The position numbers were made by a program, and so were the translations under genes. Source: Octopus sinensis (lineage: Eukaryota). From it: DNA of 64,000 nt. This document shows, in pieces, positions 25,063 through 64,000 of the stretch. Under the pieces are notes generated by a model, which was given only the letters and a program-made list of their open reading frames with translations, searched no databases and was not told the origin of the DNA. How positions within the stretch are numbered: position 1 is the stretch's first letter; each line of letters opens with the position of its first letter. The stretch lies in assembly GCF_006345805.1 (NCBI RefSeq), contig NC_043014.1, forward strand, positions 10,912,001-10,976,000. The letters are read 5' to 3'.

Positions 25063-25100
25063 AATATATATATATAAATATAATATATATATAAAATATA

Positions 25101-25142: not shown

Positions 25143-25145
<3 letters not shown>

Positions 25146-26090: not shown

Positions 26091-26197
26091 TATATATAAA
26101 TATTATATCTATATATATATAAATATATATATATATATTATATATATATATATATAAATATATAATACTATATATATATATATATATATATATAAAT

Positions 26198-26242
<45 letters not shown>

Positions 26243-26282
26243 AATATATATATATATATATAATATATATATATATATAATT

Positions 26283-26395
<113 letters not shown>

Positions 26396-26402
26396 TATAT
26401 AT

Positions 26403-26479
<77 letters not shown>

Positions 26480-26604
26480 ATATATATATAACTATATATA
26501 TATAATATATAAATATATATATATATATAATAAATATATATAGATATATATATATATATTATATATAATATATATATAATATATATAAATATATATATAT
26601 ATAT

Positions 26605-29447: not shown

Positions 29448-29449
29448 AT

Positions 29450-29495
<46 letters not shown>

Positions 29496-29578
29496 AATAT
29501 ATATATATATATAATATATATATAAAATATATATTATATATATATATTATATATATAATATATAAATATATATATTAT

Positions 29579-29610
<32 letters not shown>

Positions 29611-29639
29611 ATATATATAAATATATAATCTATATATAT

Positions 29640-29676
<37 letters not shown>

Positions 29677-29699
29677 ATATATATATATATGATATATAT

Positions 29700-29733
<34 letters not shown>

Positions 29734-29947
29734 TATATTATATAATATATATATATAAATTAATATATATATATATTATAATAAATAAATATATATATAT
29801 ATATATATCTATACTATATATATATATATAAATATTATATATATTATATATAATATATTATATATATATATATAAATATTATATATATATATATAAAATA
29901 TATATATATATCTATATAAAATATATATATATATATCTATATATATA

Positions 29948-29989
<42 letters not shown>

Positions 29990-35654: not shown

Positions 35655-36410
35655 AAAGACCAAGTTAGCAGAATCTTCAGCACACCGGAAAAATGCTTAG
35701 AGGTATTTTGTCTGTCCTTTCGTTCTAAGTTCAAATTCCGCCGAGGTCGACTTTGCCTTTCATCCTTTCGAGGTCGATAAATTAAGTACCAGTTACGCAC
35801 TGGAACCGATATAATCGATTTAATCGTTTGTCTGTCCATCTTTGTCCCCTCTGTGTTTAGCCCCTTGTGGGTAGTAAAGAAATAGGTATTTCGTGTGCCG
35901 TTACGTTCTGAGTTCAAATTCCGCCGAGGTCGACTTTGCTTTTCATCCTTACGGGGTCGATAAATTAAGTACCAGTTACGCACTGGGGTCGATATAATCG
36001 ACTTAATTCATTTGTCTGTCCTTGTTTGTCCTCTCTGTGTTTAGCCCCTTGTGGGTAGTAAAGAAATAGGTATTTCGTCTGCCGCTACGTTCTGAGTTCA
36101 AATTCCGCCGAGGTCGACTTTGCCTTTCATCCTTTCGGGGTCGATAAATTAAGTACCAGTTACGCACTGGGGTCGATATAATCCGTTTGTCTGTCCTTGT
36201 TTGTCCTCTCTGTGTTTAGCCCCTTGTAGGTGGTAAAGAAATAGGTATTTCGTCCGTCTTTATGTTCTGAATGGAAACGCTGCCGAGGTGACTTTGCCTT
36301 TCATTCTTTCGAGGTCGATAAAAGAAGTACCTGTTGAACATTGGGGTCGATGTAATCGATTATCCTCCTCCTCGTAAATTTGAGGCCTTGTGTAGAAGGG
36401 ATTAAGGCGG
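35655..36410 (+). repeat. Family C SINE tetramer
   Basis: Head near 35660 and aaata|ggtatttcgt junctions near 35885, 36068 and 36243. Confidence 0.88.
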
Positions 36411-39260: not shown

Positions 39261-40377
39261 CGATAAGGTTTAATTGCAGTCTTTTATATTCTAGGGCCAG
39301 TTTTCATCATCATCATCATCATCATCATGTAGCGTCCACTTTCCATGCTGGCATGGGTTGGACGGTTCAACTGGGGTCTGTGAAGCCAGAAGGCTGCATC
39401 AGGCCCAGTCTGATCTGGCAGTGTTTCTACGGCTGGATGCCCTTCCTAACGCCAACCACTCCGTGAGTGTAGTGGGTGCTTTTTACGTGTTCAACACCGA
39501 TGTAGAATAAGTAGCAATCAATAGCGGAATCGGTTCGATCGAATTAACCAATCACTTGTTTGGAGTAGCGCGTACGAGGTCAGATCATAAAGTAGCGGGA
39601 CTCTCTTTTACTCTTTTACTTGTTTCAGTCATTTGACTGTGGCCATGCTGGAGCACCGCCTTTATTCGAGCAACTCGACCCCGGAACTTATTCTTTTGTA
39701 AGCCCAGTACTTATTCTATCGGTCTCTTTTGCCGAACCGCTAAGTTACGGGGACATAAACACACCAGCATCGGTTGTCAAGCAATGCTAGGGGGACAAAC
39801 ACAGACACACAAACTCATATATATATACATATATACGACTTCTTTCACTTTCCGTCTACCAAATCCACTCACAAGGCTTTGGCCGGCCCGAGGCTATAGT
39901 AGAAGACACTTGCCCAAGCTGCCACGCAGTGGGACTGAACCCGGAACCATGTGGTTGGTAAACAAGCTACTTACCACACAACCACTCCTGGTGCTATAAA
40001 AAAAAAAAAAGAAAACTACAACACGTATCAAATCGGTATTTAATTTCCTTCGATGTAGATCCTCTGAAGCCACACACTTTATTCAGTGTGGTTTCCATGG
40101 ATGGAAGCATTCCTGGAACTTCTTTTGGGAGGATAGCAAACAGCTGTCTCGTTACATTCTCTTGAATTTCCTGTATGTCTCGAAATCTTGTTCCTTTCAA
40201 ATCGAACTTGAATTTTGGGAAGATTCTTGGTCGTAATAATCTCCAAGTCTTTCCAATATTAAAAAAAAAAATCGATCAATTTTCTATCAGTCAATTCCAA
40301 ACTGATAATTCTAAGATGCATCTGTAAAGGTTGCTAGTGGAAGGGAAGTAACTCTGACTAGTCCATATTACATTAAA

Positions 40378-41000: not shown

Positions 41001-42948
41001 TCTGTATGAAATAAAACATCAACCAACTCTGCATCCTCACATCATGTCTAGAATATTCACCTTATATACAAAGGTTCACACAATATGCACATAGATATGC
41101 TAAATATTCACACATCCATGTATATTTGATGATAGCATCTTCTCTGAAACATAATAATGATTAAGCTCATTAGCTCTCGACCTAAACAGCCAGCTTTTAA
41201 ATACACATAACATCTTTTAACATCTACCTTCCGTGCTAGCATGGGTGGGACAACCATGTCTGGATATTCAATCTGTCAGGCTAATGAAAAAGTCCTGCCT
41301 TCTGTTACACATACCATATTTTAACTTGTATAGGGTACCGGTGTTTCGTCAAAAATTAGGCTAAAAAAATATAGGAGTTTCTTACACAGGGACAGTATTA
41401 TAATTCCTTACAAAACCTTTTTTCCAAGTTTCAAGCTCAAAAAATTAAAGGGTTCCTAATACATGAGGGTTCCGCATATATGTTAAAATAGTCATCATTA
41501 TCATCATCGTTTAATGTCCGCTTTCCATGCTAGCATAGGTTGGACGTATGACTGAGGACTGGCGAACCACATGGCTGCACCAGGTTCCAATCTTGATCTG
41601 GCAGAGTTTCTACAGCTGGATGCCCTTCCTAACGCCAACCACTCCGAGAGTGGAGTGCATGCTTTTATGTGCCACCAGCATGAGGGCCAGTCCAGCGGCA
41701 CTGGCAACGACCTCGCTCGAATGTTTTTTCATGTGCCACTGGAACAAGTGCCAGTAAGGCAACGCTGGTAACAATCACACACGAATGGTGCCTTTTACAT
41801 ACCACCAGCATGGAAGCCAGTTAGCCGCTCTGGCAATAATCACGTTCGGATGCCAAGCGTAACACGCAAAGTATATATCCCAACACACCAACAAAAATAA
41901 GACGTATCCTCATGAGAACATCACAGTGGCTGTGTGGTAAGTAGCTTGCTAAACAACCACATGGTTGCGGGTTCAGTCCCACTGCGTGGCATCTTGGGCA
42001 AGTGTCTTCTGCTATAGCCCCGGGCCGACCAATGCCTTGTGAGTGGATTTGGTACACGGAAACTGAAAGAAGCCTGTCGTATATATGTATATATATATGT
42101 ATGTGTGTGTGTTTGTGTGCCTGTGTTTGTCCCCCTAGCATTGCTTGACAACCGATGCTGGTGTGTCTACGTCCCCGCCACTTAGCGGTTCGGCAAAAGA
42201 GACCGATAGAATAAGTACTGGGCTTACAAAGAATAAGTTCCGGGGTCGATTTGATCGACTAAAGGCGGTGCTCCAGCATGGCCGCAGTCAAATGACTGAA
42301 ACAAGTAAAAGAGATAAAAAAAAGAGTAAAAGAGTATATATACACAAATGTATACGTATTTATACAAACATCTATACAAGCATACACAGACATCCTTGTA
42401 AACATGTATATACACAAGCACTTGGTCTATAATCATTAACCTGATAAAATGTTTTCTGTTGGACTCATGATTCTGGATAGAATTTTTATTCACTCTCAGA
42501 CTGAGGTCTTTATTCCAAGTGATTGAACATGGCTCTTCTTTTTTCCACTTGATATCCATGTAACATACAGCACCTCTCCCTCTCTCCCCCTATTTCCACT
42601 ATTTCCAAACCAATCTGAGAATGTCTAATATAACTCCTAACAGCGTATCTAATATGTATGTGTATGTAGGTGTATATATATTATATATATATTATTTTCC
42701 AATCACTTTCGGAATTACAACAATTGGTGGCTTGAAGTTTAACTGCTCTTTCTAGTGAGTCAGATATCCCATTTTTGGGGGTATCTCTTTTGTGTTTGAA
42801 TGTACACTGTATTCTTCTATGAATTATGTATAGTCTATTGACTAATTTTTTTCCTTCTCGCTAGACCACTGGTAACTAAGAATTTTTTCGATAAATATTC
42901 TTGCTACCCTAAGATTTTAATTAATATATATATATATATATATATATT

Positions 42949-45148: not shown

Positions 45149-45713
45149 CTGGGTTGTCCGGAAAGTTCATGCCGATTTTTAAAGGAAAGAAAAAGGTCAA
45201 TAAATACTTGCCATTACATTTTTAATCAACCAAATATGAACCATTTTGTTGCACAATGCGTCTCCATCTTTCGTTTACCTTGAAAATACCCTCTTCCCAG
45301 AATGAGGTGGTTTCATGGCAAAGAATTCATCAAGGTATCTTTTTACATCATCCAAGGAATTGAAATTTTTACCATTAAGACTATTCTGCAAAGACCTGAA
45401 TAAGTGGAAATCCGAAGGAGCAATATCTGGTAAACATGGAGGGTGGGGTAACACATCCCAGCCGAGCTGCAGCAATTTTTGTCTGGTTCCCAAAGCATCA
45501 AGTGCCGAAAATGAACTTTCTTACCTCCCATTTTAAAGGGTTACAGAATTAACACAGGTTATAGGAACATAATCCTTCTTCCACGAAAAGATAGCTTAAA
45601 CTGTGCTCTAAATGGAGGTGTAGTCAAATCCTATTTTACGGACTCAACCATGTTCTAAAATAAGTCGAAATGTAAGCTACTATAAATCGGCACGAATTTT
45701 CCAGACAACCCAA
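45149..45713 (-). mobile_element. Same non-autonomous mariner, uninterrupted copy (about 565 bp)
   Basis: Both TIRs with TA flanks. The N-terminal KKVHFRHLMLW is joined directly to the C-terminal GTRQKLLQLGWDVLPHPP..APSDFHLF. Confidence 0.92.
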
Positions 45714-46065: not shown

Positions 46066-46510
46066 ATTTATGTGGCACGTAAAAGCACCATCCGTTCGTA
46101 TCCGTTGCCAGCCTCGCCTGGCCCCCGTGCCGATGACACGTAAAAGCACCATTCGTTCGTGGACGTTTGCCAGCTCTGTCTGGCCCCCATGCTGGTGACA
46201 CGTAAAAGCACCATCCGATCGTGGCCGTTTGCCAGCCTCGCCTGGCCCCCATGCCGGTGACACGTAAAAGTACCATCCGATTGTGGCCGTTTGCCAGCTC
46301 TGTCTGGCACCTGTGCGGGTGGCACGTAAAAAGCACCCACTACACTCACGGAGTGGTTGGCGTTAGGAAGGGCATCCAACCGTAGAAACACTGCCAGATC
46401 TGACTGGGCCTGACTAAGCCTTCCAGCTTCACAGACCCCAGTTGAACCGTCCAACCCATGCTAGCATGGAAAACGGACGCTAAATGATGATTATGATGAT
46501 GACGATGACT
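46066..46510 (+). mobile_element. SINE-like family D: minisatellite of about 57 bp plus a tail ending in (GAT)n
   Basis: Four gcacgtaaaagcaccatcc..gccagcctcgcctggc units, then gtggttggcgttaggaagggcatcca..catgctagcatggaaa..gatgatgat. Other copies: 39303-39490 -, 41494-41850 -, 43355-43435 +, 49005-49250 +. Confidence 0.85.
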
Positions 46511-46653
46511 GGAGGGAGTACATTTTTTGTTGATCCTACTTTAACAAAACAATAAACTATACAAACACACACGTGTGTGTAGAGAGAGACATTTAAATAC
46601 ACACACAAAAACTCATATTGGGATGTTTCAACAACCAAAGCAATTTAAATCAT

Positions 46654-47527: not shown

Positions 47528-47781
47528 TTATTTTCTGGATTTCTTCGACTTCTTCGAGTGCTTGCTGCGGCTGCCGCCTCCTCCCCCACCTCCTCCTCCG
47601 CTGCGGCTGCCGCCTCCTCCTCCGCTGCGGCTGCCGCCTCCTCCTCCGCTGCTGCTGCGTCTGTTGCGGCTACCTCCTCCTCCTCCTCCTCCTCCGCTGC
47701 TGCTCTCGCGTTTCCGCTTCGTGCCATGCGTTGGGAGCGTCCTCTGATCCCTCTCCTCCTCCTGGTTACGCTCGTAGTCAG
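47528..47781 (-). CDS. SUPT16H: Spt16 last coding exon (G/S/R-rich, basic tail)
   Basis: Acceptor ttatctttttgcag|, phase 1. Encodes (A)DYERNQEEERDQRTLPTHGTKRKRESSSGGGGGGGSRNRR...SRSKHSKKSKKSRK, then TAA at 47528-47530. This frame is absent from the ORF track. Confidence 0.9.
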
Positions 47782-48029: not shown

Positions 48030-48710
48030 TCGAGTTTCTTATTTCTTTACTACCCGCAAGGGGCTACACACAGAGGGGACAAACAAGGACAGACAAAGGG
48101 ATTAAGTCGATTACATCAACCCCAGTGCATAACTGGTACTTAATTTATCGACCCCCGAAAGGATGAAAGGCAAAGTCGACCTCGGTGGAATTTGAACTCA
48201 GAACATAACGGCAGACGAAATACCGCTAAGTATTTCGCCCAGCGTGCTAACGGTTCTTATTTCATTATTGCCCACAAGGGGCTAAACATATAGAGGACAA
48301 ACAAGGACAGACAAACAGATTAAGTCGATTATACCGACCCCAATGCGTAACTGGTACTTATTTAATCGAACCCCGAAAGGATGAAAGGCAAAGTCGACCT
48401 CAGCGGAATTTGAACTCAGAACATAACGGCAGACGAAATACTGCTAAGTATTTCGCCCGGCGTGCTAAAGTTTCTTATTTCTTTATTGCCCACAAGGGGC
48501 TAAACATAGAGGGGACAAACAAGGACAGTCAAACGGATTAAGTCGATTATATCAACCCCAATGTGTAACTGGTACTTATTTAATCGACCCCGAAAGGATG
48601 AAAGGCAAAGTCGACCTCGGCGGAATTTGAACTCAGAACATAGCGGCAGACAAAATACCGCTAAGCATTTCGCCTGCCGTGCTAACGTTTCTGCCACCTC
48701 GCCGCCTTCA
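48030..48710 (-). repeat. Family C SINE trimer with units of about 217 bp (intronic in SUPT16H)
   Basis: Period 217-218 (48214, 48432, 48649). The junction joins the tail aaataagaa to the head-internal cgttagcacg. Confidence 0.88.
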
Positions 48711-49274
48711 AATGGTACTTATCTTATTAAACCTAAAAGGATGAAAAAGCAAGGTCGACCTCAGTGAAATTTGAATTCATAAACCTAAGAAATGCCACTG
48801 AACATTTTGGCTGGCATGCTAACTATTCTGCCAGGCACAGGGCCTGAAATTTTGGCAGAGGGAAGCCTGATGATTACCTCAACCCACAGCACTCAAATGG
48901 CACTTATTAACCCTAAAAGAACGAAAAACAAGGCAGAGCTTTGAATTTTAATTCATAAGCATAAGAAATACCAATAAGCATTTTGAGCAACACTTTAACA
49001 GTTCTGTAATCCGACCGTGGCCGATGCCAGCCTCGCCTGGCACCAGTGCAGGTGGCACGTAAAAAGCACCCACTACACTCACGGAGTGGTTGGCGTTAGG
49101 AAGGGCATCCAGCCGTAGAAACATTGCCAGATAAGACCGGAGCCTGGTGCAGCCTTCTGGCTTCCCAGATCCCCGGTCGAACTGTCCAACCCATGCTAGC
49201 ATGGAGAACGGACGTTAAACGATGATGTTGATGATGATGATGATGATGATGTTGGCTCACCAAACTAAAAACAA

Positions 49275-49935
49275 CTGCAGCAGCAGCCGTTCAAGAATTT
49301 GGACCTGGAGATCTCCATTTCCAGCGACTTTGAGGGTCACCTCCCAGTGATGTCGGGTGTCAACGAAGAGCCCTCGACTACAAGACAACCAAAGTTATTT
49401 TTTTCCAAGGTCTGGAGTCTCCCGCCCCCTAAGCCCTAAACCATCACCTAACCACCCTTACCCGTCTTGTTGCTTAACAACAACAACAACAGCAGCAGCA
49501 CCCATTCAAGAATTTGGACCTGGAGATCTCCATTCTCAGCGTCTTCGAAGGCCACCTCCCAGTGGTGTCGGGCGTCAATGAAGAGACCTCGACTACAACA
49601 AGATGACCAAAATTTTTTTTTTCCAAGGTCTGGGGTCTCAAGCCCCTAAGCCCTAGACCAGTGCTTTTCAACCTTTTTGCTGGAGCGGAACCCCAAGGAA
49701 ACATTCCACTGGCTCGAGGAACCCCTGTGCAATAATTTAATCGTCTTATGCACACATATCTGCACAGGAGAATTAAAAAATTACTGCCGATTTCAGCAGT
49801 TTTGTAACTTCTTGAGGAACCCCTGGACTGTACTGGCAGAACCCTGGTTGAAAACCACTGCCCTAGACCATCACCTAATCACCCTTACCTGTCTTGTTGC
49901 TTAACAACAACAACAACAACAACAGCAACAACAAT
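49275..49935. repeat. Unit of about 210 bp in two tandem copies next to the SUPT16H donor site; third copy at 34035-34285
   Basis: aatttggacctggagatctccatt..gccctagaccatcacctaatcacccttacc..(aac)n is present in all copies. Confidence 0.85.
49659..49860. mobile_element. hAT (Charlie-like) MITE, 202 bp, 8-bp TSD
   Basis: TIRs cagtgcttttcaacc / ggttgaaaaccactg. TSD ccctagac at 49651-49658 and 49861-49868. Confidence 0.92.
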
Positions 49936-49940: not shown

Positions 49941-50015
49941 CTCGTCGTGCTTCTTCTTCCAGTTCGTCCCAATCTTTACCGCTCTCTTCGCTTGAACCAA
50001 GATCGTCTTCATAAT
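49941..50015 (-). CDS. SUPT16H: Spt16 penultimate coding exon
   Basis: Acceptor tcatctttcgtag| and donor |gtaaga. 75 nt, phase 1 to 1, encoding (D)YEDDLGSSEESGKDWDELEEEARR(A). This contains the conserved Spt16 motif ESGKDWDELEEEA(R/K)xAD. Confidence 0.95.
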
Positions 50016-51199: not shown

Positions 51200-51326
51200 C
51201 TGATTCTTCTTCATCTTCCCAGTTGCTCTCTTCGCTGTCCTCTTCACTACTGGCTTCCTCGCCGCCAGAGTCATTACTAGGAACATAAGCATCATCATCT
51301 TCCTCGTCGTCATCGTCATGCTCGTC
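51200..51326 (-). CDS. SUPT16H: Spt16 (FACT complex subunit) acidic C-terminal exon, third from last
   Basis: Acceptor ttcatctgtttgcag| and donor |gtattt. 127 nt, phase 0 to 1, encoding DEHDDDDEEDDDAYVPSNDSGGEEASSEEDSEESNWEDEEES. Splices in frame to the next exon and matches the layout of the Spt16 acidic domain. Confidence 0.9.
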
Positions 51327-51475
51327 CTGCAAACAGATGAAAGAAAAATTTTCATTATGCTGGTGGTTCTCAACCAAAATCCATGGGTCAAAGGAGACCC
51401 AGACGAATTTATATTGCATGGCCCCACTCCTCTCTCAAAACATTTTTGTCTTGCAGATTGCTTGGTGACCCTTTC

Positions 51476-54400
51476 AGTGTAGGTGCCACTTAAAAAAGCA
51501 TCCTGTCCACACTGTAAAGTGGTTGGCATTTGGAAGGGCATCCAGCTGTAAAAGAACCTAGCCAAAACTGACCTCGCCTGTGCTTGTACCACATTAAAAG
51601 CCCTAAGTCCACGCAGCTGAGCAGTTGGTGTTAGGAAGGACATCCAGCTGTAAAAGCCTTGCCAAAACTGACCTCGCCTGTGCTTATACCACATTAAAAG
51701 CCCTAAGTCCACTTGACTAAGCAGTTGGTGTTAGGAAGGGCATCCAGCTGTAAAAGCCTTGCCAAAACTGACCTCGCCTGTGCTTATACCACATTAAAAG
51801 CAGTAAGTCCACGCAGCTGAGCAGTTGGTGTTAGGAAGGGCATCCAGCTGTAAAAGCCTTGCCAAAACTGACCTCACCTGTGCTTGTACCACATTAAGAG
51901 CCCTAAGTCCACTCAGCTGAGCAGTTGGTGTTAGGAAGGGCATCCAGCTGTAAAAGCCTTGCCAAAACTGACCTCGCCTGTGCTTGTACCACATTAAAAG
52001 CCCTAAGTCCACTCAGCTGAGCAGTTGGTGTTAGGAAGGGCATCCAGCTGTAAAAGCCTTGCCAAAACTGACCTCGCCTGTGCATGTACCACATTAAAAG
52101 CCCTAAGTCCACTTGGCAGAGCAGTTGGTGTTAGGAAGGGCATCAAGCTGTAAAAGCCTTGCCAAAACTGACCTCGCCTGTGCTTGTACCACATTAAAAG
52201 CCCTAAGACCACGCAGCTGAGCAGTTGGTGTTAGGAAGGGCATCCAGCTGTAAAAGTCTTGCCAAAACTGACCTCGCCTGTGCATGTACCACATTAAAAG
52301 CCCTAAGTCATGGCAGAGCAGTTGGTGTAGGAAGGCATCGAGCTGTAAAAGCCTTGCCAAAAAATGACCTGCCTGTGCTTGTACCACATTAAAAGCCCTA
52401 AGTCCACTGGCAGAGCAGTTGGTGTTAGGAAGGGCATCCACTGTAAAAGCCTTGCCAAAACTGACCTCGCTGTGCTTGTACCACATTAAAAGCAGTAAGT
52501 CACTCAGCTGGGCAGTTGGTGTTAGGAAGGGCATCCAGCTGTAAAAGCCTTGCCAAACTGCCTCGCCTGTGCTTGTACCACATTACAAGCAGAAGTCCAC
52601 TCAGCTGAGCAGTTGGTGTTAGGAAGGGCATCCAGCTGTAAAAGCCTTGCCAAAACTGACCTCGCCTGTGCCTGTACCACATTAAAAGCAGTAAGTCCAC
52701 TCAGCTGAGCAGTTGGTGTTAGGAAGGGCATCCAGCTGTAAAAGCCTTGCCAAAACTGACCTCGCCTGTGCATGTACCACATTAAAAGCAGTAAGTCCAC
52801 TTGGCTGAGCAGTTGGTGTTAGGAAGGGCATCCGCTGTAAAAGCCTTGCCAAAACTGACCTCGCCTGTGCTTGTACCACATTAAAAGCAGTAAGTCCACT
52901 CAGCTGAGCAGTTGGTGTTAGGAAGGCATCCAGCGGTAAAGCCTTGCAAAAACTGACCTCGCCTGTGCTTGTACCACATTAAAAGCAGTAAGTCCACTCA
53001 GCTGAGCAGTTGGTGTTAGGAAGGGCATCCACTGTAAAAGCCAGGCCAAAACTGACCTCGCCTGTGCTTGTACCACATTAAAAGCTAGTAGTCCGCTCGG
53101 CAGAGCAGTTGGTGTTAGGAAGGGCAGCCACTGTAAAAGCCTTGCCAAAACTGACCTCGCCTGTGCATGTACCACATTAAAAGCAGTAAGTCCACTCAGA
53201 TGAGCAGTTGGTGTAAGGAAGAGCATCCAGCTGTAAAAGCCTTGCCAAAACTGACCTCGCCTGTGCTTGTACCACATTAAAAGCAGTAAGTCCGCTCGGC
53301 AGAGCAGTTGGTGTTAGGAAGGGCAGCCAGCTGTAAAAGCCTTGCCAAAACTGACCTCGCCTGTGCATGTACCACATTAAAAGCAGTAAGTACACTCAGC
53401 TGAGCGGTTGGTGTTAAGAAGGGCATCCAGCTGTAAAAGCCTTGCCAAAACTGACCTCGCCTGTGCATGTACCACATTAAAAGCAGTAAGTCCACTCAGC
53501 TGAGCAGTTGGTGTTAGGAAGGGCATCCAGCTGTAAAGGCCTTGCAAAACTAACGACTCGCCTGTGCTTGTACCACATTAAAAGCCCTAAGTCCACTCGG
53601 CAGAGAGTTGCTGTTAGGAAGGCATCCAGCTGTAAAAGCCTTGCCAAAACTGACCTCGCCTGTGCTTGTACCACATTAAAAGCAGTAAGTCCACTCAGCT
53701 GAGCAGTTGGTGTTAGGAAGGGCATCCAGCTGTACAAGCCTTGCCAAAACTGAACCTCACCTGTGCTTGTACCACATTAAAAGCAGTAAGTCCACTCAGC
53801 TGAGCAGTTGGTGTTAGGAAGGGCATCCAGCTGTAAAAGCCTTGCCAAACTGACCTCGCCTGTGCTTGTACCACATTAAAACAGTAAGTCCACTCAGCTG
53901 AGCAGTTGGTGTTAGGAAGGGCATCCAGCTGTACAAGCCTTGCCAAAACTGACCTCGCCTGTGCATGTACCACTTAAAAGCAGTAGTCCACTCAGCTGAG
54001 CGTTTGTGTTAGAAGGGCATCCAGCTGTAAAAGCCTTGCCAAAACTGACCTCGCCTGTGCTTGTACCACATTAAAAGCCTAAGTCCACTCGGCAGAGAGT
54101 TGCTGTTAGGAAGGGCATCCAGCTGTAAAAGCCTTGCCAAAACTGACCTCGCCTGTGCTGTACCACATTAAAAGCAGTGAGTCCACTCAGCTGAGCAGTT
54201 GGTGTTAAGAAGGGCAGCCAGCTGTAAAAGCCTTGCCAAAACTGACCTCGCCTGTGCTTGTACCACATTAAAAGCCCTAAGTCCACTCGCAGAGTTGGTG
54301 TTAGGAAGGGCATCCAGCTGTAAAAGCCTGCCAAAATGACCTTCGCCTGTGCTTGTACCACATTAAAAGCAGTGAGTCCACTCAGCTGAGCAGTTGGTGT

Positions 54401-57400
54401 TAAGAAGGGCAGCCAGCTGTAAAGGCCTTGCCAAAACTGACCTCGCCTGTGCTTGTACCACATTAAAAGCCCTAAGTCCACTCGGCAGAGAGGTTGCTGT
54501 TAGGAAGGGCATCCAGCTGTAAAAGCCTTGCCAAAACTGACCTCGCCTGTGCTTGTACCACATTAAAAGCAGTAAGTCCACTCAGCTGAGCAGTTGGTGT
54601 TAGGAAGGGCATCCAGCTGTAAAAGCCTTGCCAAAACTGACCTCGCCTGTGCTTGTACCACATTAAAAGCAGTAAGTCCACTCAGCTGAGCAGTTGGTGT
54701 TAGGAAGGGCATCCAGCTGTAAAAGCCTTGCCAAAACTGACCTCACCTGTGCTTGTACCACATTAAAAGTAGTAAGTCCACTCAGCTGAGCAGTTGGTGT
54801 TAGGAAGGGCATCCAGCTGTAAAAGCCTTGCCAAAACTGACCTCGCCTGTGCATGTACCACATTAAAAGCAGTAAGTCCACTCAGCTGAGCAGTTGGTGT
54901 TAGGAAGGGCATCCGGCTGTAAAAGCCTTGCCAAAACTGACCTCGCCTGTGCTTGTACCACATTAAAAGCAGTAAGTCCACTCAGCTGAGCAGTTGGTGT
55001 TAGGAAGGGCATCCAGCGGTAAAGGCCTTGCAAAAACTGACCTCGCCTGTGCTTGTACCACATTAAAAGCAGTAAGTCCACTCAGATGAGCAGTTGGTGT
55101 TAGGAAGGGCATCCAGCTGTAAAAGCCAGGCCAAAACTGACCTCGCCTGTGCTTGTACCACATTAAAAGCAGTAAGTCCACTCAGCTGAGCAGTTGGTGT
55201 TAGGAAGGGCATCCAGCTGTAAAAGCCAGGCCAAAACTGACCTCGCCTGTGCTTGTACCACATTAAAAGCAGTAAGTCCACTCAGCTGAGCAGTTGGTGT
55301 TAGGAAGGGCATCCAGCTGTAAAAGCCTTGCCAAAACTGACCTCGCCTGTGCTTGTACCACATTAAAAGCAGTAAGTCCACTCAGCTGAGCAGTTGGTGT
55401 TAGGAAGGGCATCCAGCTGTAAAAGCCTTGCCAAAACTGACCTCGCCTGTGCTTGTACCACATTAAAAGCAGTAAGTCCACTCAGCTGAGCAGTTGGTGT
55501 TAGGAAGGGCATCCAGCGGTAAAGCCTTGCCAAAACTGACCTCGCCTGTGCTTGTACCACATTAAAAGCAGTAAGTCCACTCAGCTGAGCAGTTGGTGTT
55601 AGGAAGGGCATCCAGCTGTAAAAGCCTTGCCAAAACTGACCTCGCCTGTGCTTGTAACCACATTAAAAGCAGTAAGTCCACTCAGCTGAGCAGTTGGTGT
55701 TAGGAAGGGCATCCAGCTGTAAAAGCCAGGCCAAAACTGACCTCGCCTGTGCTTGTACCACATTAAAAGCAGTAAGTCCACTCAGATGAGCAGTTGGTGT
55801 TAGGAAGGGCATCCAGCTGTAAAAGCCTTGCCAAAACTGACCTCGCCTGTGCTTGTACCACATTAAAAGCAGTAAGTCCGCTCGGCAGAGCAGTTGGTGT
55901 TAGGAAGGGCAGCCAGCTGTAAAAGCCTTGCCAAAACTGACCTCGCCTGTGCATGTACCACATTAAAAGCAGTAAGTCCGCTCGGCAGAGCAGTTGGTGT
56001 TAGGAAGGGCAGCCAGCTGTAAAAGCCTTGCCAAAACTGACCTCGCCTGTGCATGTACCACATTAAAAGCAGTAAGTCCACTCAGCTGAGCGGTTGGTGT
56101 TAAGAAGGGCAGCCAGCTGTAAAAGCCTTGCCAAAACTGACCTCGCCTGTGCTTGTACCACATTAAAAGCAGTAAGTCCACTCAGCTGAGCAGTTGGTGT
56201 TAGGAAGGGCATCCAGCTGTAAAAGCCTTGCCAAAACTGACCTCGCCTGTGCTTGTACCACATTAAAAGCCCTAAGTCCACTCGGCAGAGAGTTGGTGTT
56301 AGGAAGGGCATCCAGCTGTAAAAGCCTTGCCAAAACTGACCTCGCCTGTGCTTGTACCACATTAAAAGCAGTAAGTCCACTCAGCTGAGCAGTTGGTGTT
56401 AGGAAGGGCATCCAGCTGTAAAAGCCTTGCCAAAACTGACCTCGCCTGTGCTTGTACCACATTAAAAGCAGTAAGTCCACTCAGCTGAGCAGTTTGTTTT
56501 AGGAAGGGCATCCAGCTGTAAAAGCCTTGCCAAAACTGACCTCACCTGTGCTTGTACCACATTAAAAGCAGTAAGTCCACTCAGCTGAGCAGTTGGTGTT
56601 AGGAAGGGCATCCAGCTGTAAAAGCCTTGCGAAAACTGACCTCGCCTGTGCTTTTACCACATTAAAAGCCCTAAGTCCACCCAGCTGAGAAGTTGGTGTT
56701 AGGAAGGGCATCCAGCTGTACAAGCCTTGCCAAAACTGACCTCGCCTGTGCTTGTACCACATTAAAAGCAGTAAGTCCACTCAGCTGAGCAGTTGGTGTT
56801 AGGAAGAGCATCCAGCTGTAAAAGCCTTGCCAAAACTGACCTCGCCTGTGCTTGTACCACATTAAAAGCAGTAAGTCCACTTGGTTGAGCAGTTGGTGTT
56901 AGGAAGGGCATCCAGCTGTAAAAGCCTTGCCAAAACTGACCTCGCCTGTGCTTGTACCACATTAAAAGCAGCAAGTCCACTCAGCTGGGCAGTTGGTGTT
57001 AGGAAGGGCATCCAGCTGTAAAAGCCTTGCCAAAACTGACCTCGCCTGTGCTTGTACCACATTAAAAGCAGTAAGTCCACTCAGCTGAGCAGTTGGTGTT
57101 ATGAAGGGCATCCAGCGGTAAAAGCCTTGACAAAACAGACCTCGCCTGTGCTTGTACCACATTAAAAGCAGTAAGTCCACTCAGCTGAGCAGTTGGTGTT
57201 AGGAAGGGCATCCAGCTGTAAAAGCCTTGCCAAAACTGACCTCGCCTGTGCTTGTACCACATTAAAAGCAGTAAGTCCACTCAGCTGAGCAGTTGGTGTT
57301 AGCAAGGGCATCCAGCTGTACAAGCCTTGCCAAAACTGACCTCGCCTGTGCTTGTACCACATTAAAAGCAGTAAGTCCACTCAGCTGAGCAGTTGGTGTT

Positions 57401-60400
57401 AGGAAGAGCATCCAGCTGTAAAAGCCTTGCCAAAACTGACCTCGCCTGTGCTTGTACCACATTAAAAGCCCTAAGTCCACTCAGCTGAGCAGTTGGTGTT
57501 AGGAAGGGCATCCAGCTGTAAAAGCCTTGCCAAAACTGACCTCGCCTGTGCTTGTACCACATTAAAAGCCCTAAGTCCACTCAGCTGAGCAGTTGGTGTT
57601 AGGAAGAGCATCCAGCTGTAAAAGCCTTGCCAAAACTGACCTCGCCTGCGCTTGTACCACAATAAAAGCCCTAAGTCCACTTGGCTGAGCAGTTGGTGTT
57701 AGGAAGGGAATCCAGCTGTAAAAGACTTGCCAAAACTGACCTCACCTGTACTTGTACCACATTAAAAGCCCTAAGTCCACTCAGCTGAGCAGTTGGTGTT
57801 AGGAAGGGCATCCAGCTGTAAAAGCCTTGCCAAACGTGACCTCGCCTGTGCTTGTACTACATTAAAAGCAGTAAGTCCACCTGGTTGAGCAGTTGGTGTT
57901 AGGAAGGGCATCCAGCTGTAAAAGCCTTGCCAAAACTGACCTCGCCTGTGCTTGTACCACATTAAAAGCAGTAAGTCCACTTGGTTGAGCAGTGGTGTTA
58001 GGAAGGGCATCCAGCTGTAAAAGCCTTGCCAAAACTGACCTCGCCTGTGCTTGTACTACATTAAAAGCAGTAAGTCCACTTGGTGAGCAGTTGGTGTTAG
58101 GAAGGGCATCCAGCTGTAAAAGCCTTGCCAAAACTGACCTCGCCTGTGCTTGTACACATTAAAAGCAGTAAGTCCACTTGGCTGAGCAGTTGGTGTTAGG
58201 AAGGGCATCCAGCTGTAAGAGCCTTGCCAAAACTGACCTCGCCTGTGCTTGTACCACATTAAAAGCAGTAAGTCCACTAGGTTAAGCAGTTGGTGTTAGG
58301 AAGGGCATCCAGCTGTAAAAGCTTGCCAAAACTGACCTCGCCTGTGCTTGTACCACATTAAAAGCAGTAAGTCCACTGGGAGCAGTTGGTGTTAGGAAGG
58401 GCATCCAGCTGTAAAAGCCTTGCCAAAACTGATCTGCCTGTGCTTGTACCACATTAAAAGCAGTAAGTCCACTCAGCTCAGCAGTTAGTGTTAGGAAGGG
58501 CATCCAGCTGTAAAAGCCTTGCCAAAACTGACCTCGCCTGGTTTGTACCACGTTAAAAGCAGTAAGTCCACTTGGTGAGCAGTTGGTGTTAGGAAGGGCA
58601 TCCAGCTGTAAAAGCCTTGCCAAAAATGACCTCGCCTGTGCTTGTACCACATTAAAAGCAGTAAGTCCACTTGGCTGAGCAGCAGGTGTTAGGAAGGGCA
58701 TCCAGCTGTAAAAGCCTTGCCAAAACTGACCTCGCCTGCTTTGAACCACATTAAAAGCAGTAAGTCCACTCAGCTGAGCAGTTGGTGCTAGGAAGGGCAT
58801 CCAGCTGTAAAAGCCTTGCCAAAACTGACCTCGCCTGTGCTTGTACCACATTAAAAGCCCTAAGTCCACTCAGCTGAGCAGTTGGTGTTAGGAAGGGCAT
58901 CCAGCTGTAAAAGCCTTGCCAAAACTGACCTCGCCTGTGCTTGTACCACATTAAAAGCCCTAAGTCCACTCAGCTGAGCAGTTAGTGCTAGGAAGGGCAT
59001 CCAGCTGTACAAGCCTTGCCAAAACTGACCTCGCCTGTGCTTGTACCACATTAAAAGCAGTAAGTCCACTCAGCTGAGCAGTTGGTTTTAGGAAGAGCAT
59101 CCAGCTGTAAAAGCCTTGCCAAAACTGACCTCGCCTGTGCTTGTACCACATTAAAAGCCCTCAGTCCACTCAGCTGAGCAGTTGGTGTTAGGAAGGGCAT
59201 CCAGCTGTACAAGCCTTGCCCAAACTGACCTCACCTGTGCTTGTACCACATTAAAAGCAGTAAGTCCACTCAGCTGAGCAGTTGGTGTTAGGAAGAGCAT
59301 CCAGCTGTAAAAGCCTTGCCAAAACTGACCTCGCCTGTGCTTGTACCACATTAAAAGGCCAAAGTCGACTCAGCTGAGCAGTTGGTGTTAGGAAGGGCAT
59401 CCAGCTGTAAAAGCCTTGCCAAAACTGACCTCGCCTGTGCTTGTACCACATTAAAAGCCCTAAGTCCACTCAGCTGAGCAGTTGGTGTTAGGAAGAGCAT
59501 CCAGCTGTAAAAGCCTTGCCAAAACTGACCTCGCCTGTGCTTGTACCACATTAAAAGCAGTAAGTCCACTCAGCTGAGCAGTTGGTGTTAGGAAGGGCAT
59601 CCAGCTGTAAAAGCCTTGCCAAACTGACCTCGCCTGTGCTTGTACCACATTAAAAGCCCTAAGTCCACTTGGCTGAGCAGTTGGTGTTAGGAAGGGATCC
59701 AGCTGTAAAAGACTTGCCAAAACTGACCTCGCCTGTGCTTGTACAACATTAAAAGCCCTAAGTCCACTCAGCTGAGCAGTTGGTGTTAGGAAGGGCATCC
59801 AGCAGTAAAAGCCTTGCCAAAACTGACCTCGCCTGTGCTTGTACCACATTAAAAGCAGTAAGTCCACTGGTGAGCAGTTGGTGTTAGGAAGGGCATCCAG
59901 CTGTAAAAGCCTTGCCAAAACTGACCTAGCCTGTGCTTGTACCACATTAAAAGCCCTAAATCCCCTTGGCAGAGCAGTTGGTGTTAGGAAGGGCATCCAG
60001 CTGTAAAAGCCTTGCCAAAACTGACCTCGCCTGTGCTTGTACCACATTAAAAGCAGTGAGTCCACTCAGCTGGGCAGTTGGTGTTAGGAAGGGCATCCAG
60101 CTGTAAAAGCCTTGCCAAAACTGACCTCGCCTGTGCTTGTACCACATTAAAAGCAGTAAGTCCACTCAGCTGAGCAGTTGGTGTTAGGAAGGGCATCAAG
60201 TTGTAAAAGCCTTGACAAAACTGACCTCGCCTGTGCTTGTACCACATTAAAAGCAGTAAGTCCACTCAGCTGAGCAGTTGGTGTAGGAAGGGCATCCAGC
60301 TGTAAAAGCCTTGCCAAAACTGACCTCGCCTGTGCTTGTACCACATTAAAAGCAGTAAGTCCACTCAGCTGAGCAGTTGGTGTTAGGAAGGGCATCAGCT

Positions 60401-63400
60401 GTAAAAGCCTTGCCAAAACTGACCTCGCTGTGCTTGTACCACATTAAAAGCAGTAAGTCCACTCAGCTGAGCAGTTGGTGTTAGGAAGGGCATCCAGCTG
60501 TAAAAGCCTTACCAAAACTGACCTCGCCTGTGCTTGTACCACATTAAAAGCAGTAAGTCCACTCAGCTGAGCAGTTGGTGTTAGGAAGGGCATCCAGCTG
60601 TACAAGCCTTGCCAAAACTGACCTCGCCTGTGCTTGTACCACATTAAAAGCAGTAAGTCCACTCAGCTGAGCAGTTGGTGTTAGGAAGAGCATCCAGCTG
60701 TAAAAGCCTTGCCAAAACTGACCTCGCCTGTGCTTGTACCACATTAAAAGCAGTAAGTCCACTCAGCTGAGCAGTTGGTGTTAGGAAGGGCATCCAGCTG
60801 TAAAAGCCTTGCCAAAACTGACCTCGCCTGTGCTTGTACCACATTAAAAGCAGTAAGTAAGTCCACTCAGCTGAGCAGTTGGTGTTAGGAAGGGCATCCA
60901 GCTGTAAAAGCCTTGCCAAAACTGACCTCGCCTGTGCTTGTACCACATTAAAAGCAGTAAGTCACTCAGCTGAGCAGTTGGTGTTAGGAAGGGCATCCAG
61001 CTGTAAAAGCGTTGCCAAAACTGACCTCGCCTGTGCTTGTACCACATTAAAAGCCCTAAGTCCACTTGGCTGAGCAGTTGGTGTTAGGAAGGGAATCCAG
61101 CTGTAAAAGACTTGCCAAAACTGACCTCGCCTGTGCTTGTACCACATTAAAAGCCCTAAGTCCACTCAGCTGAGCAGTTGGTGTTAGGAAGGGCATCCAG
61201 CTGTAAAAGCCTTGCCAAAACTGACCTCGCCTGTGCTTGTACTACATTAAAAGCAGTAAGTCCACATGGTTGAGCAGTTGGTGTTAGGAAGGGCATCCAG
61301 CTGTAAAAGTCTTGCCAAAACTGACCTCGCCTGTGCTTGTAACACATTAAAAGCAGTAAGTCCACTGGTTGAGCAGTTGGTGTTAGGAAGGGCATCCAGC
61401 TGTAAAAGCCTTGCAAAAACTGACCTCGCCTGTGCTTGTACTACATTAAAAGCAGTAAGTCCACTGGTTGAGCAGTAGGTGTTAGGAAGGGCATCCAGCT
61501 GTAAAAGCCTTGCCAAAACTGACATCGCCTGTGCTTGTACCACATTAAAAGCAGTAAGTCCACTTGGCTGAGCAGTTGGTGTTAGGAAGGGCATCCAGCT
61601 GTAAAAGCCTTGCCAAAACTGACCTCGCCTGTGCTTGTACCACATTAAAAGCAGTAAGTCCACTTGGTTGAGCAGTTGGTGTTAGGAAGGGCATCCAGCT
61701 GTAAAAGCCTTGCCAAAACTGAACTCGCCTGTGCTTGTACCACATTAAAAGCAGTAAGTCCACTTGGCTGAGCAGTTGGTGTTAGGAAGGGCATCCAGCT
61801 GTAAAAGCCTTGCAAAAACTGACCTCGCCTGTGCTTGTACCACATTAAAAGCCCTAAGTCCACTCAGCTGAGCAGTTGGTGTTAGGAAGAGCATCCAGCT
61901 GTAAAAGCCTTGCCAAAACTGACCTCGCCTGTGCTTGTACCACATTAAAAGCAGTAAGTCCACTCAGCTGAGCAGTTGGTGTTAGGAAGGGCATCCAGCT
62001 GTAAAAGCCTTGCCAAAACTGACCTCGCCTGTGCTTGTACCACATTAAAAGCCCTAAGTCCACTTGGCTGAGCAGTTGGTGTTAGGAAGGGAATCCAGCT
62101 GTAAAAGACTTGCCAAAACTGACCTCGCCTGTGCTTGTACCACATTAAAAGCCCTAAGTCCACTCAGCTGAGCAGTTGGTGTTAGGAAGGGCATCCAGCT
62201 GTAAAAGCCTTGCCAAAACTGACCTCGCCTTTGCTTGTAACATTAAAACAGTAAGTCCACTTGGTTGAGCAGTTGGTGTTTGGAAGGGCATCCAGCTGTA
62301 AAAGCCTTGCCAAAACTGACCTGCCTGTGCTTGTACCACATTAAAAGCAGTAAGTCCACTTGGTGAGCAGTTGGTGTTAGGAAGGGCATCCAGCTGTAAA
62401 AGCCTTGCCAAAACTGACCTCGCCTGTGCTTGTACCACATTAAAAGCAGTAAGTCCACTTGGTTGAGCAGTTGGTGTTAGGAAGGGCATCCAGCTGTAAA
62501 AGCCTTGCCAAAACTGACCTCGCCTGTGCTTGTACCACATTAAAAGCAGTAAGTCCACTTGGGAGCAGTTGGTGTTAGGAAGGGCATCCAGCTGTAAAAG
62601 CCTTGCCAAAACTGACCTCGCCTGTGCTTGTACCACATTAAAAGCCCTAAGTCCACTCAGCTGAGCAGTTGGTGTTAGGAAGAGCATCCAGCTGTAAAAG
62701 CCTTGCCAAAACTGACCTCGCCTGTGCTTGTACCACATTAAAAGCAGTAAGTCCACTCAGCTGAGCAGTTGGTGTTAGGAAGGGCATCCAGCTGTAAAAG
62801 CCTTGCCAAAACTGACCTCGCCTGTGCTTGTACCACATTAAAAGCCCTAAGTCCACTTGGCTGAGCAGTTGGTGTTAGGAAGGGAATCCAGCTGTAAAAG
62901 ACTTGCCAAAACTGACCTCGCCTGTGCTTGTACCACATTAAAAGCCCTAAGTCCACTCAGCTGAGCAGTTGGTGTTAGGAAGGGCATCCAGCTGTAAAAG
63001 CCTTGCCAAAACTGACCTCGCCTGTGCTTGTATTACATTAAAAGCAGTAAGTCCACTTGGTTGAGCAGTTGGTGTTAGGAAGGGCATCCAGCTGTAAAAG
63101 CCTTGCCAAAACTGACCTCGCCTGTGCTTGTACCACATTAAAAGCCCTAAGTCCACTCAGCTGAGCAGTTGGTGTTAGGAAGGGCATCCAGCTGTAAAAG
63201 CCTTGCCAAAACTGACCTCGCCTGTGCTTGTACCACATTAAAAGCCCTAAGTCCACTCAGCTGAGCAGTTGGTGTTAGGAAGAGCATCCAGCTGTAAAAG
63301 CCTTGCCAAAACTGACCTCGCCTGTGCTTGTACCACATTAAAAGCAGTAAGTCCACTCAGCTGAGCAGTTGGTGTTAGGAAGGGCATCCAGCTGTAAAAG

Positions 63401-64000
63401 CCTTGCCAAAACTGACATCGCCTGTGCTTGTACCACATTAAAAGCCTAAGTCCACTTGGCTGAGCAGTTGGTGTTAGGAAGGGAATCCAGCTGTAAAAGA
63501 CTTGCCAAAACTGACCTCGCCTGTGCTTGTACCACATTAAAAGCCCTAAGTCGACTCAGCTGAGCAGTTGGTGTTAGGAAGGGCATCCAGCTGTAAAAGC
63601 CTTGCCAAAACTGACCTCGCCTGTGCTTGTACCACATTAAAAGCAGTAAGTCCACTTGGTTGAGCAGTTGGTGTTAGGAAGGGCATCCAGCTGTAAAAGC
63701 CTTGCCAAAACTGACCTAGCCTGTGCTTGTACCACATTAAAAGCCCTAAATCCCCTTAGCAGAGCAGTTGGTGTTAGGAAGGGCATCCAGCTGTAAAAGC
63801 CTTGCCAAAACTGACCTCGCCTGTGCTTGTACCACATTAAAAGCAGTGAGTCCACTCAGCTGGGCAGTTGGTGTTAGGAAGGGCATCCAGCTGTAAAAGC
63901 CTTGCCAAAACTGACCTCGCCTTGCTTGTACCACATTAAAAGCAGTAAGTCCACTCAGCTGAGCAGTTGGTGTTAGGAAGGGCATCGAGTTGTAAAAGCC
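51476..64000. repeat. 100-bp satellite array (about 125 units, truncated by window end), intronic in SUPT16H
   Basis: Unit cagctgagcagttggtgttaggaagggcatccagctgtaaaagccttgccaaaactgacctcgcctgtgcttgtaccacattaaaagcagtaagtccact repeated head to tail. The first unit is diverged and SINE-like. Confidence 0.99.

What the first reader, a model, noticed from the sequence alone, without database searches (positions are those of the whole stretch)
51460..64000. A >=12.5 kb satellite born from a SINE, inside an intron of the essential FACT gene SUPT16H, with its birth junction preserved
Seen: the 100-bp unit aligns piecewise to family D. The block gttggtgttaggaagggcatccagctgtaaaagccttgcca matches gttggcgttaggaagggcatccagccgtagaaacattgcca (49090-49130). 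The block cctcgcctg..cacattaaaagca..ccactc matches cctcgcctgg..cacgtaaaaagcacccactacactc (49030-49082). The first unit (51476-51575) is intermediate between SINE and satellite, and the array stops only about 130-150 bp from the exon acceptor at 51327. Inference: a family D copy underwent runaway tandem amplification via the shared tgcca microhomology. Intronic status assumes the upstream Spt16 exons lie beyond the window.
Basis: partly seen in the sequence, partly recalled or inferred. Interest (0 to 1): 0.8.

Follow-up and report, generated by a model that had tools for sequence, protein, structure and literature searches.

The report
SINE-derived 100-bp tandem array beside SPT16 exons
A real tandem array of at least 12.5 kb, built from a 100-bp internal piece of a nearby mobile-element family, lies about 150 bp upstream of the last three exons of the chromatin gene SPT16; this kind of repeat is already known, and the window cannot show whether it sits in an intron.

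Summary
From 51476 to the window end there is one uninterrupted array of 124 full 100-bp monomers, on average 96% identical to their consensus. The monomer is a single colinear piece of about 101 bp of the dispersed SINE-like family D (74-79% identity, z = 23 against shuffles), not two separate blocks. It includes D's deeply conserved central core. The first monomer is a true intermediate: 8 SINE-like, 16 satellite-like and 3 other states at 27 diagnostic positions.

Three corrections apply:
- The duplication junction cannot be the bare TGCCA. It lies in a longer imperfect direct repeat (TTGCCAG..GCCTGG..TGCAG) that D carries as part of its own 62-bp internal repeat.
- No SINE 5' arm is detectable upstream of unit 0, so "birth junction preserved" is only partly shown.
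- The adjacent SPT16 exon (51326-51200, minus strand) lacks the 42 conserved codons that precede it in the same exon in every other animal sampled. The intron would therefore be lineage-specific, or the gene copy is truncated. Upstream exons are not in the window.

SINE-derived satellites are already described in squamates and a limpet. This is a new member of a known kind, of modest interest.

The parts
51576..64000 (+). Homogenised 100-bp tandem array: 124 monomers plus a partial one, running off the window end. Consensus GACCTCGCCTGTGCTTGTACCACATTAAAAGCAGTAAGTCCACTCAGCTGAGCAGTTGGTGTTAGGAAGGGCATCCAGCTGTAAAAGCCTTGCCAAAACT. Its orientation equals the SINE sense strand, which is antisense to SPT16.
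   Evidence: Mean identity to consensus is 96%. There are two main variants, GCAGTAAG and GCCCTAAG. There is no higher-order periodicity. CpG observed/expected is 0.20, against 0.88 in the rest of the window.
51476..51575 (+). Unit 0, the unhomogenised edge monomer, intermediate between SINE D and the satellite.
   Evidence: It is 69% identical to the satellite consensus. At 27 diagnostic columns it is 8 D-like, 16 satellite-like and 3 other. The D-like states are interleaved with satellite-like states in its 5' 60 nt.
51329..51475 (.). Unique spacer between the array and the putative SPT16 acceptor. It ends (in gene sense) in tttttctttcatctgtttgcag.
   Evidence: No significant similarity to SINE D, to the satellite or to the missing 5' part of the exon. 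No other copy in the window.
51200..51326 (-). SPT16 exon X3' (127 nt), encoding DEHDDDDEEDDDAYVPSNDSGGEEASSEEDSEESNWEDEEES. The AG acceptor is at 51328-51327 and the GT donor at 51199-51198.
49941..50015 (-). SPT16 exon Y, encoding (D)YEDDLGSSEESGKDWDELEEEARR.
47528..47781 (-). SPT16 terminal coding exon Z, encoding ADYERNQEEERDQR...SRSKHSKKSKKSRK plus the stop. It contains a coding 24-bp repeat (SRSGGGGG).
48990..49255 (+). Family D SINE-like copy used as reference. Layout: 62-bp module remnant, conserved core (49089-49125), 3' region, (GAT)n tail. The source segment of the satellite unit corresponds to about 49046-49152.
46072..46520 (+). Family D copy whose 5' 62-bp module is itself tandemly repeated 4.3 times (46072-46337).
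41488..41850 (-). Family D copy with about 3 copies of the 62-bp module.
39304..39489 (-). Family D copy that is 5'-truncated close to the point where the satellite unit starts.
61821..63013 (+). Recent block duplication inside the array. Monomers 61821-62220 and 62614-63013 are identical (0 differences over 400 bp) at an offset of 8 monomers.

Best explanation
This is a SINE-derived tandem array (a satellite-like macro-VNTR) that most likely arose in place.

Proposed sequence of events:
1. A copy of the SINE-like family D, probably 5'-truncated, sat antisense to SPT16, about 150 bp upstream of the exon that encodes the start of the acidic tail.
2. That copy aged. It lost CpGs and acquired private substitutions that unit 0 still shares with the array.
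3. A segment of about 101 bp was duplicated. The segment runs from GTGGCACGTAAAAAGCACC through the conserved core to ...TTGCCAG..GCCTGG..TGCAG. It is bracketed in every D copy by imperfect direct repeats, because D's 5' part is itself a variable 62-bp tandem module with the same ends. Replication slippage or unequal sister-chromatid exchange between these ends gives the first dimer.
4. Repeated unequal exchange then expanded the array to at least 125 units and homogenised it. The outermost monomer escaped homogenisation.

What is shown: the array, its homology to D, its colinearity with D, the intermediate edge unit, the CpG-directional differences and the block duplication. What is inferred: in-place origin, the exact breakpoints and the exchange mechanism.

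The array has no demonstrated function. It is most likely a tolerated passenger in non-coding DNA upstream of the last three SPT16 exons. The gene-sense strand of the unit carries no AATAAA or ATTAAA signal; this was read by eye from the consensus, not computed.
For: Array anatomy.

Unit versus D: 74-79% identity, E = 1e-11 to 1e-13, z = 23. The alignment is colinear and includes the 16 nt beyond TGCCAG.

Direct repeats in the D copy at 48990: TGCCAG at 49025 and 49125, GCCTGG at 49035 and 49142, GTGCAG at 49046 and 49147.

D's own 62-bp module is present in 1.3 to 4.3 copies in different D copies.

Direction SINE to satellite:
- Three of the four CpGs in the D segment are TpG or CpA in the satellite, and array CpG o/e is 0.20 against 0.88.
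- The 22-nt core occurs in 65 unrelated metagenome contigs as a single copy each. One (L055) has a tRNA-Arg-like head 58 bp upstream.

Edge relic: unit 0 is 8 D-like, 16 satellite-like and 3 other. The slightly more ancestral GCCC variant dominates the first 9 units. The proximal 3 kb is more heterogeneous than monomers 30-60.

Unequal exchange: an identical 400-bp block at an offset of 8 monomers.

Precedent: the same anatomy, with a terminal unit more SINE-like than the rest, is described for SINE-derived satellites in squamates (PMC10702118).
Against: - No significant SINE 5' arm lies upstream of unit 0 (z = -0.9). The distal end, where the SINE 3' arm, the (GAT)n tail and a target-site duplication should lie, is outside the window.
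- Whether the same satellite exists at other loci is unknown. Every attempt to reach the source genome or relatives failed.
- The satellite core (CAGCTGTAAAA) is closer to the pan-animal core than to the D copies in the window (CAGCCGTAGAAA). The founder may therefore have belonged to an older or different D subfamily.
- Family D shows no recognisable tRNA head and no target-site duplications. 'SINE' is a reasonable label, not a proven one.
Confidence: 0.62

Rival explanations
1. The array is one locus of a multi-locus satellite family that was born elsewhere from a D-type SINE. It reached this position by segmental insertion or ectopic exchange, or it appears here through an assembly misjoin at a repeat.
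For: Array edges of any satellite keep diverged monomers, so unit 0 alone does not fix the birthplace. No SINE 5' arm is detectable next to unit 0. The satellite core is closer to the pan-animal core than to the local D copies. In squamates, abundant SINE-derived satellites are multi-locus (PMC10702118).
Against: Unit 0 carries satellite-specific derived states and D-ancestral states interleaved, as expected of the founder lineage. No second array or proto-array of the 100-bp unit occurs in the other 51 kb, even though 4-5 D copies are there. Monomer variation is structured rather than noisy, which argues against an assembly artefact.
Confidence: 0.2
2. The SPT16 piece in the window is not the intact gene. 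It is either a 5'-truncated duplicate or pseudogene whose exon was cut by the array or its founding insertion, or a misjoin. In either case the array is not intronic.
For: The 42 conserved codons that precede this sequence within the same exon in L001, in L067-L075 and in about 19 other animals are absent from the window. The array begins only 148 bp from the break point.
Against: The break coincides exactly with a codon boundary and a strong acceptor (tttttctttcatctgtttgcag|GAC). The three exons splice in frame into a 151-aa tail ending in a basic KKSKKSRK stop. dN/dS against relatives is 0.04 at dS 1.27. The donor and the next two introns are conserved with L001.
Confidence: 0.2
3. The direction is reversed: family D captured a monomer of a pre-existing satellite and spread it.
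For: Capture of satellite repeats by mobile elements is known in molluscs (discussion in PMC11121367). D has an internal tandem module of its own.
Against: The shared segment contains a core found in SINE-like elements of unrelated organisms, one of them with a tRNA-like head. Where the two differ at CpG sites, D has CpG and the satellite has TpG or CpA. Unit 0 is closer to D than the array interior is.
Confidence: 0.03

Closest known systems
SINE-derived satellites (sSats) of squamate reptiles (Vassetzky, Kosushkin and Ryskov 2023, PMC10702118)
   Same: Tandem arrays whose unit is an internal portion of a resident SINE. The terminal unit is more SINE-like than the rest. Longer arrays are more homogeneous. 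The proposed origin is a primary duplication followed by unequal exchange and concerted evolution.
   Different: The phylum and the SINE family differ. Here only one locus is visible. The terminal unit does not demonstrably extend to the SINE terminus. The array lies next to coding exons rather than in a subtelomere.
PcH-Sat of the limpet Patella caerulea, derived from a Nin-SINE (Petraccioli et al. 2024, PMC11121367)
   Same: A mollusc satellite whose monomer contains a large piece of a SINE of the Nin/Deu superfamily.
   Different: PcH-Sat has a 179-bp unit, makes up about 10% of the genome and is pericentromeric. It mostly uses the SINE's 3' part, with only 26 bp of the Nin domain. The unit here is 100 bp and is centred on the conserved core.
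Nin (Nin-DC)/Deu-domain SINE superfamily (Piskurek and Jackson 2011; distribution table in PMC5804259)
   Same: Family D has a central core, TTGG.GTTAGGAAGGGCATCCAGC.GTA.AA. Its 22-38 nt recur in SINE-like elements of unrelated host DNA, one of them behind a tRNA-like head. The Nin domain is reported from molluscs, annelids, cnidarians and chordates.
   Different: I match the core to the Nin domain from memory only; no reference sequence was available. D shows no recognisable tRNA head or target-site duplication, and it has an unusual 62-bp tandem module at its 5' end.
Head-to-tail SINE multimers and SINEs with internal duplications
   Same: The same window holds many tandem multimers of a different 184-bp tRNA-like element, and there is a 62-bp internal array in D. 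This genome therefore tandemises SINE sequence routinely.
   Different: Those arrays have 2-7 units. This one has at least 125 units and has been homogenised.

Membership tests
SINE-derived satellite (sSat) | Long head-to-tail tandem array | tested here: met
   At least 124 monomers, uninterrupted over 12.5 kb.
SINE-derived satellite (sSat) | The monomer is homologous to part of a SINE that is also present as dispersed copies in the same genome | tested here: met
   74-79% identity to 4 dispersed D copies, z = 23, colinear.
SINE-derived satellite (sSat) | A terminal unit extending into flanking SINE sequence up to the SINE terminus | tested here: inconclusive
   Unit 0 is intermediate, but there is no significant SINE 5' arm upstream. 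The distal end lies beyond the window.
Classical satellite DNA | High genomic abundance, multiple loci, heterochromatic location | not testable with these tools
   The source genome could not be reached.
SINE (family D) | Short, dispersed, in both orientations, with a simple-repeat 3' tail | tested here: met
   Five copies of about 190-450 bp on both strands, each ending in (GAT)n.
SINE (family D) | Pol III head derived from tRNA, 5S or 7SL | tested here: not met
   ARAGORN and Rfam find nothing in the window. The 5' part is a 62-bp tandem module.
SINE (family D) | Target-site duplications | tested here: not met
   No exact flanking direct repeat of 7 bp or more for 4 copies. The copies are old, so this is weak evidence.
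Nin/Deu-domain SINE superfamily | Presence of the conserved central domain | tested here: inconclusive
   A 22-38-nt core is shared with 65 metagenome contigs, one carrying a tRNA-Arg-like head. No reference Nin sequence was available for a direct comparison.
SPT16 / SUPT16H | C-terminal acidic domain (Pfam PF21091) | tested here: met
   53.5 bits against a cut-off of 27.1. Matches human SPT16 residues 938-1016.
SPT16 / SUPT16H | The conserved ...[25 protein letters not shown] segment lies directly upstream, in the same exon | tested here: not met
   Absent from the whole window. Present and contiguous in L001, in L067-L075 and in about 19 other animals.
SPT16 / SUPT16H | The N-terminal, dimerisation and middle domains are encoded upstream on the same strand | not testable with these tools
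   They would lie beyond coordinate 64000.

The most novel reading that the evidence does not exclude
The array marks a lineage-specific new intron. In every other animal sampled, the exon runs unbroken from ...[10 protein letters not shown] into the acidic tail. Here it is cut exactly at that codon boundary by a strong acceptor, with the SINE-derived array 148 bp away. The SINE insertion, or the DNA that came with it, may have landed in the mutation-tolerant acidic coding region of an essential gene. It would then have been rescued by being spliced out, and later inflated to at least 12.5 kb. That would be a datable case of intron gain by insertion of a mobile element into a coding exon.
Probability: 0.15. 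Interest if true: 0.7.

Novelty: new member of a known kind. Interest (0 to 1): 0.35.

Why it matters
This locus shows how a satellite can start. The edge keeps a monomer that is intermediate between the parent element and the array. The parent SINE-like family carries short internal repeats that would favour the first duplication. It adds a probable cephalopod example to the few documented SINE-to-satellite transitions, so far described in squamates and a limpet. The taxon is my inference and was not verified.

The larger question is what the array does to gene structure. It sits at the exact point where a universally continuous SPT16 exon is broken. If upstream exons lie beyond it, an essential housekeeping gene transcribes through at least 12.5 kb of satellite in an intron that other animals lack.

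Tried and rejected
External searches that led nowhere:
- Exact look-up of two window ORFs in public assemblies: not on record.
- Protein-space search with the satellite's 72-aa consensus ORF: no hit.
- Exact scans of prokaryote genome contigs and viral contigs with a satellite-junction 22-mer and a D-specific 31-mer: no hits.
- Full-text search for the core sequence in papers: none. No paper on cephalopod satellites was found.
- Two protein searches aimed at a full-length SPT16 of the source lineage returned only short exon-sized ORFs. The closest relatives (L001, L067-L076) align only over the exons, at 80-84%.

Ideas tested and rejected:
- The 148-bp spacer is a decayed SINE arm or a decayed satellite unit. 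Not significant.
- The spacer is a decayed remnant of the missing exon part. A 26-nt colinear match (TGA-CCC-ATGGATTTT..TTGA.AA) is no better than shuffles (z = 0.1).
- A weak RCLNGIESLSW match to [11 protein letters not shown] at 51155-51123. E = 5.5, treated as chance.
- The SINE tail primed on the exon's (ATC)n run. The orientation is wrong.
- A higher-order repeat in the array. No periodicity up to offset 15.
- Indels in monomers are homopolymer sequencing errors. They are not concentrated at A-runs.

Other negatives: no tRNA or Rfam match for a SINE head, and no target-site duplications.
Full report
**1. What is there**

Tandem Repeats Finder reports a single array at 51532-64000 with period 100, 125.2 copies and 94% matches. 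A fuzzy anchor (ACCTCGCCTGTGC) occurs 125 times. Every spacing is between 95 and 104 bp, and 82 of 124 spacings are exactly 100. The array is therefore uninterrupted and runs off the window end.

The 124 full monomers average 96% identity to their consensus. Substitutions make up 3.3% of cells and indels 0.6%, and the indels do not cluster in homopolymers. Two main variants, GCAGTAAG and GCCCTAAG, occur in patches. Mean identity is flat from offset 1 to offset 15, so there is no higher-order repeat. One 400-bp block (61821-62220) is repeated without a single difference eight monomers away (62614-63013), which is the signature of recent unequal exchange. The proximal 3 kb is more heterogeneous than monomers 30-60.

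**2. Relation to the SINE-like family D**

Outside the array, the unit matches only the D copies at 48990-49255 (+), 46072-46520 (+), 41488-41850 (-) and 39304-39489 (-). Identity is 74-79% over 84-104 bp, with E = 1e-11 to 1e-13. Against the 48990 copy, the local alignment scores 69, compared with 16.5 +/- 2.2 for 500 dinucleotide-preserving shuffles (z = 23).

Multiple alignment shows one colinear segment, not two blocks. It runs from GTGCAG|GTGGCACGTAAAAAGCACC through the core TGGTTGGCGTTAGGAAGGGCATCCAGCCGTAGAAAC to TTGCCAGAT..GAC.GG.GCCTGGTGCAG, which is about 49046-49152.

In that D copy, TGCCAG occurs at 49025 and 49125, GCCTGG at 49035 and 49142, and GTGCAG at 49046 and 49147. The satellite junction ...TTGCCAAAACTGACCTCGCCTG-TGCTTGTACCAC retains AAACTGACCTCGCCTG. 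This aligns with the SINE's GATCTGACTGGGCCTG, which lies 3' of TGCCAG. A breakpoint at TGCCA alone would therefore need a 7-nt insertion plus a 7-nt deletion. A breakpoint within GCCTGG..TGCAG needs only single-base changes.

D's 5' part is itself a 62-bp tandem module (GTGGCACGTAAAAGCACC...TTTGCCAGCCTCGCCTGG....TGC.G). It is present in 1.3 to 4.3 copies in different D insertions. The 100-bp segment starts and ends with the same motifs as this module. The element thus carries its own substrate for slippage or unequal exchange. The breakpoint and the mechanism are my inference from these alignments.

**3. Direction of derivation**

Three of the four CpGs of the D segment appear in the satellite as TpG or CpA: CACGT to CACAT, GGCGTT to GGTGTT, GCCGTA to GCTGTA. 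CpG observed/expected is 0.20 in the array and 0.88 in the rest of the window.

The core 22-mer GGAAGGGCATCCAGCYGTARAA is present once each in 65 JGI metagenome contigs. Those contigs share only a 32-38-nt core with D and with the satellite. One of them (L055) has a tRNA-Arg-like gene 58 bp upstream of the core. This is the behaviour of a deeply conserved SINE central domain.

From memory I equate this core with the Nin (Nin-DC)/Deu domain. PMC5804259 lists that domain for molluscs, annelids, cnidarians and chordates. I had no reference sequence to test the match. Family D itself has a (GAT)n tail, but it has no detectable tRNA head and no target-site duplications. 'SINE-like' is therefore the safe label. 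The SINE is the ancestor and the satellite the derivative.

**4. The edge**

Unit 0 (51476-51575) is 69% identical to the satellite consensus; unit 1 is already 96%. There are 27 columns where at least 3 of 4 D copies differ from the satellite. At these, unit 0 has 8 D-like, 16 satellite-like and 3 other states. The D-like states are interleaved with satellite-like ones within the first 60 nt. Units 1-5 are 25-27 satellite-like. The GCCC variant, which keeps one more D state, dominates the first nine units.

Unit 0 is thus a true intermediate and not an independent SINE that happens to abut the array. However, the 148 bp between unit 0 and the exon show no significant similarity to the SINE 5' arm, to the satellite or to anything else in the window. 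The founder would have to be a 5'-truncated copy; D39 is truncated at almost the same point. The distal end, where the 3' arm and tail should be, is not in the window. 'Birth junction preserved' is therefore only partly shown.

**5. The gene**

On the minus strand there are three exons: 51326-51200, 50015-49941 and 47781-47528. They splice in frame into a 151-residue tail, DEHDDDDEEDDDAYVPS...EESGKDWDELEEEARRADYERNQ...KHSKKSKKSRK*. This tail matches Pfam SPT16_C at 53.5 bits against a cut-off of 27.1. It also matches human SPT16 residues 938-1016 in PDB 9eh2.

Against the nearest available relatives (L001, L067), dN/dS is 0.04 at dS 1.27. These exons have therefore been under purifying selection.

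There is one important complication. In L001, in L067-L075 and in about 19 ORFs from other animals, this sequence is preceded in the same exon by 42 highly conserved codons, [42 protein letters not shown]. Those codons occur nowhere in the window. In the window, homology stops at a codon boundary, directly after a strong acceptor (tttttctttcatctgtttgcag|GAC).

Two readings remain. Either this lineage has an extra intron that other animals lack, and the array fills it; or this copy of the gene is truncated or misjoined. The window cannot decide. I put about 0.6 on the extra-intron reading, based on the acceptor, the intact frame and the selection signal.

**6. Comparison with what is known**

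SINE-derived satellites with a more SINE-like terminal unit are described in 56 squamate genomes (PMC10702118). A limpet satellite derived from a Nin-SINE is also described (PMC11121367). I found no report for cephalopods.

The same window shows that tandemisation of SINE sequence is routine here. A different 184-bp tRNA-like element occurs 43 times, often as 3-7-mers, and D has its own 62-bp internal array. The finding is therefore a new member of a known kind. It is notable for its size, for the preserved intermediate monomer and for its position at an unusual exon break.

**7. Limits**

The organism is not identified. I believe it is a cephalopod, probably an octopod. This rests on the best exon matches and on my memory of the repeats; it is inference only. 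Nothing outside the 64 kb of the source genome could be reached. Locus specificity, total array length, the distal junction and the upstream exons all remain open.

Noticed in passing
window 2281-4982, 6475-7408, 12237-12788, 35703-36359, 48040-48658 and others: A 184-bp element with a tRNA-like stretch (GAGTTCAAATTCCGCCGAGGTCGAC) occurs 43 times in the window. It often forms head-to-tail multimers of 3-7 units, on both strands. It covers roughly a tenth of the window.
   Followed up: partly
window 46072-46337: Inside one family D copy, the 62-bp 5' module is tandemly repeated 4.3 times. Other D copies have 1.3-3 copies. This is a small-scale version of the process that made the big array.
   Followed up: partly
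window 47589-47658 (minus-strand coding, exon Z): A 24-bp tandem repeat (2.9 copies, 97% matches) lies inside the SPT16 terminal exon. It encodes repeated SRSGGGGG in the basic and glycine-rich tail. It is a coding minisatellite that may vary in length.
   Followed up: no
window 51326 (exon start) compared with L001:9929-10187 and L067:855-1117: The SPT16 exon next to the array is missing its conserved 5' 127 nt compared with three related loci and about 19 other animals. The break falls at a codon boundary with a strong acceptor.
   Followed up: yes
L002-L066 (JGI metagenome contigs); L055:1031-1183: The 22-nt SINE core occurs once each in 65 metagenome contigs, which fall into several repeat families. 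These contigs are probably animal host DNA in host-associated metagenomes. L055 has a tRNA-Arg(TCT)-like head 58 bp upstream of the core.
   Followed up: partly
window 11684-11734: A short interstitial telomere-like run (GGGTTTTAGGGTTAGGGTTG, two exact 20-bp copies).
   Followed up: no
window 24542-26604 and 29448-29988: Very long (AT)n tracts of 260-310 dinucleotide copies flank a 479-bp unit repeated 1.9 times. GC falls to 0.235 in the 24001-26000 bin.
   Followed up: no
window 45275-45493 (minus): An ORF reading ...LPHPPCLPDIAPSDFHLFRSLQNSLNGKNFNSLDDVKRYLDEFF looks like the C-terminal end of a mariner/Tc1-type transposase. It is probably a transposon remnant. This is from memory and was not tested.
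   Followed up: no
window 49290-49660 and 49640-49900: Between the D copy and SPT16 exon Y, a segment of about 210 bp is directly repeated (around 49280-49400 and around 49490-49610, each followed by ...ctaagccctaaacc/ctaagccctagacc). Each copy is preceded by (AAC)n/(CAG)n runs. This was seen by eye only.
   Followed up: no
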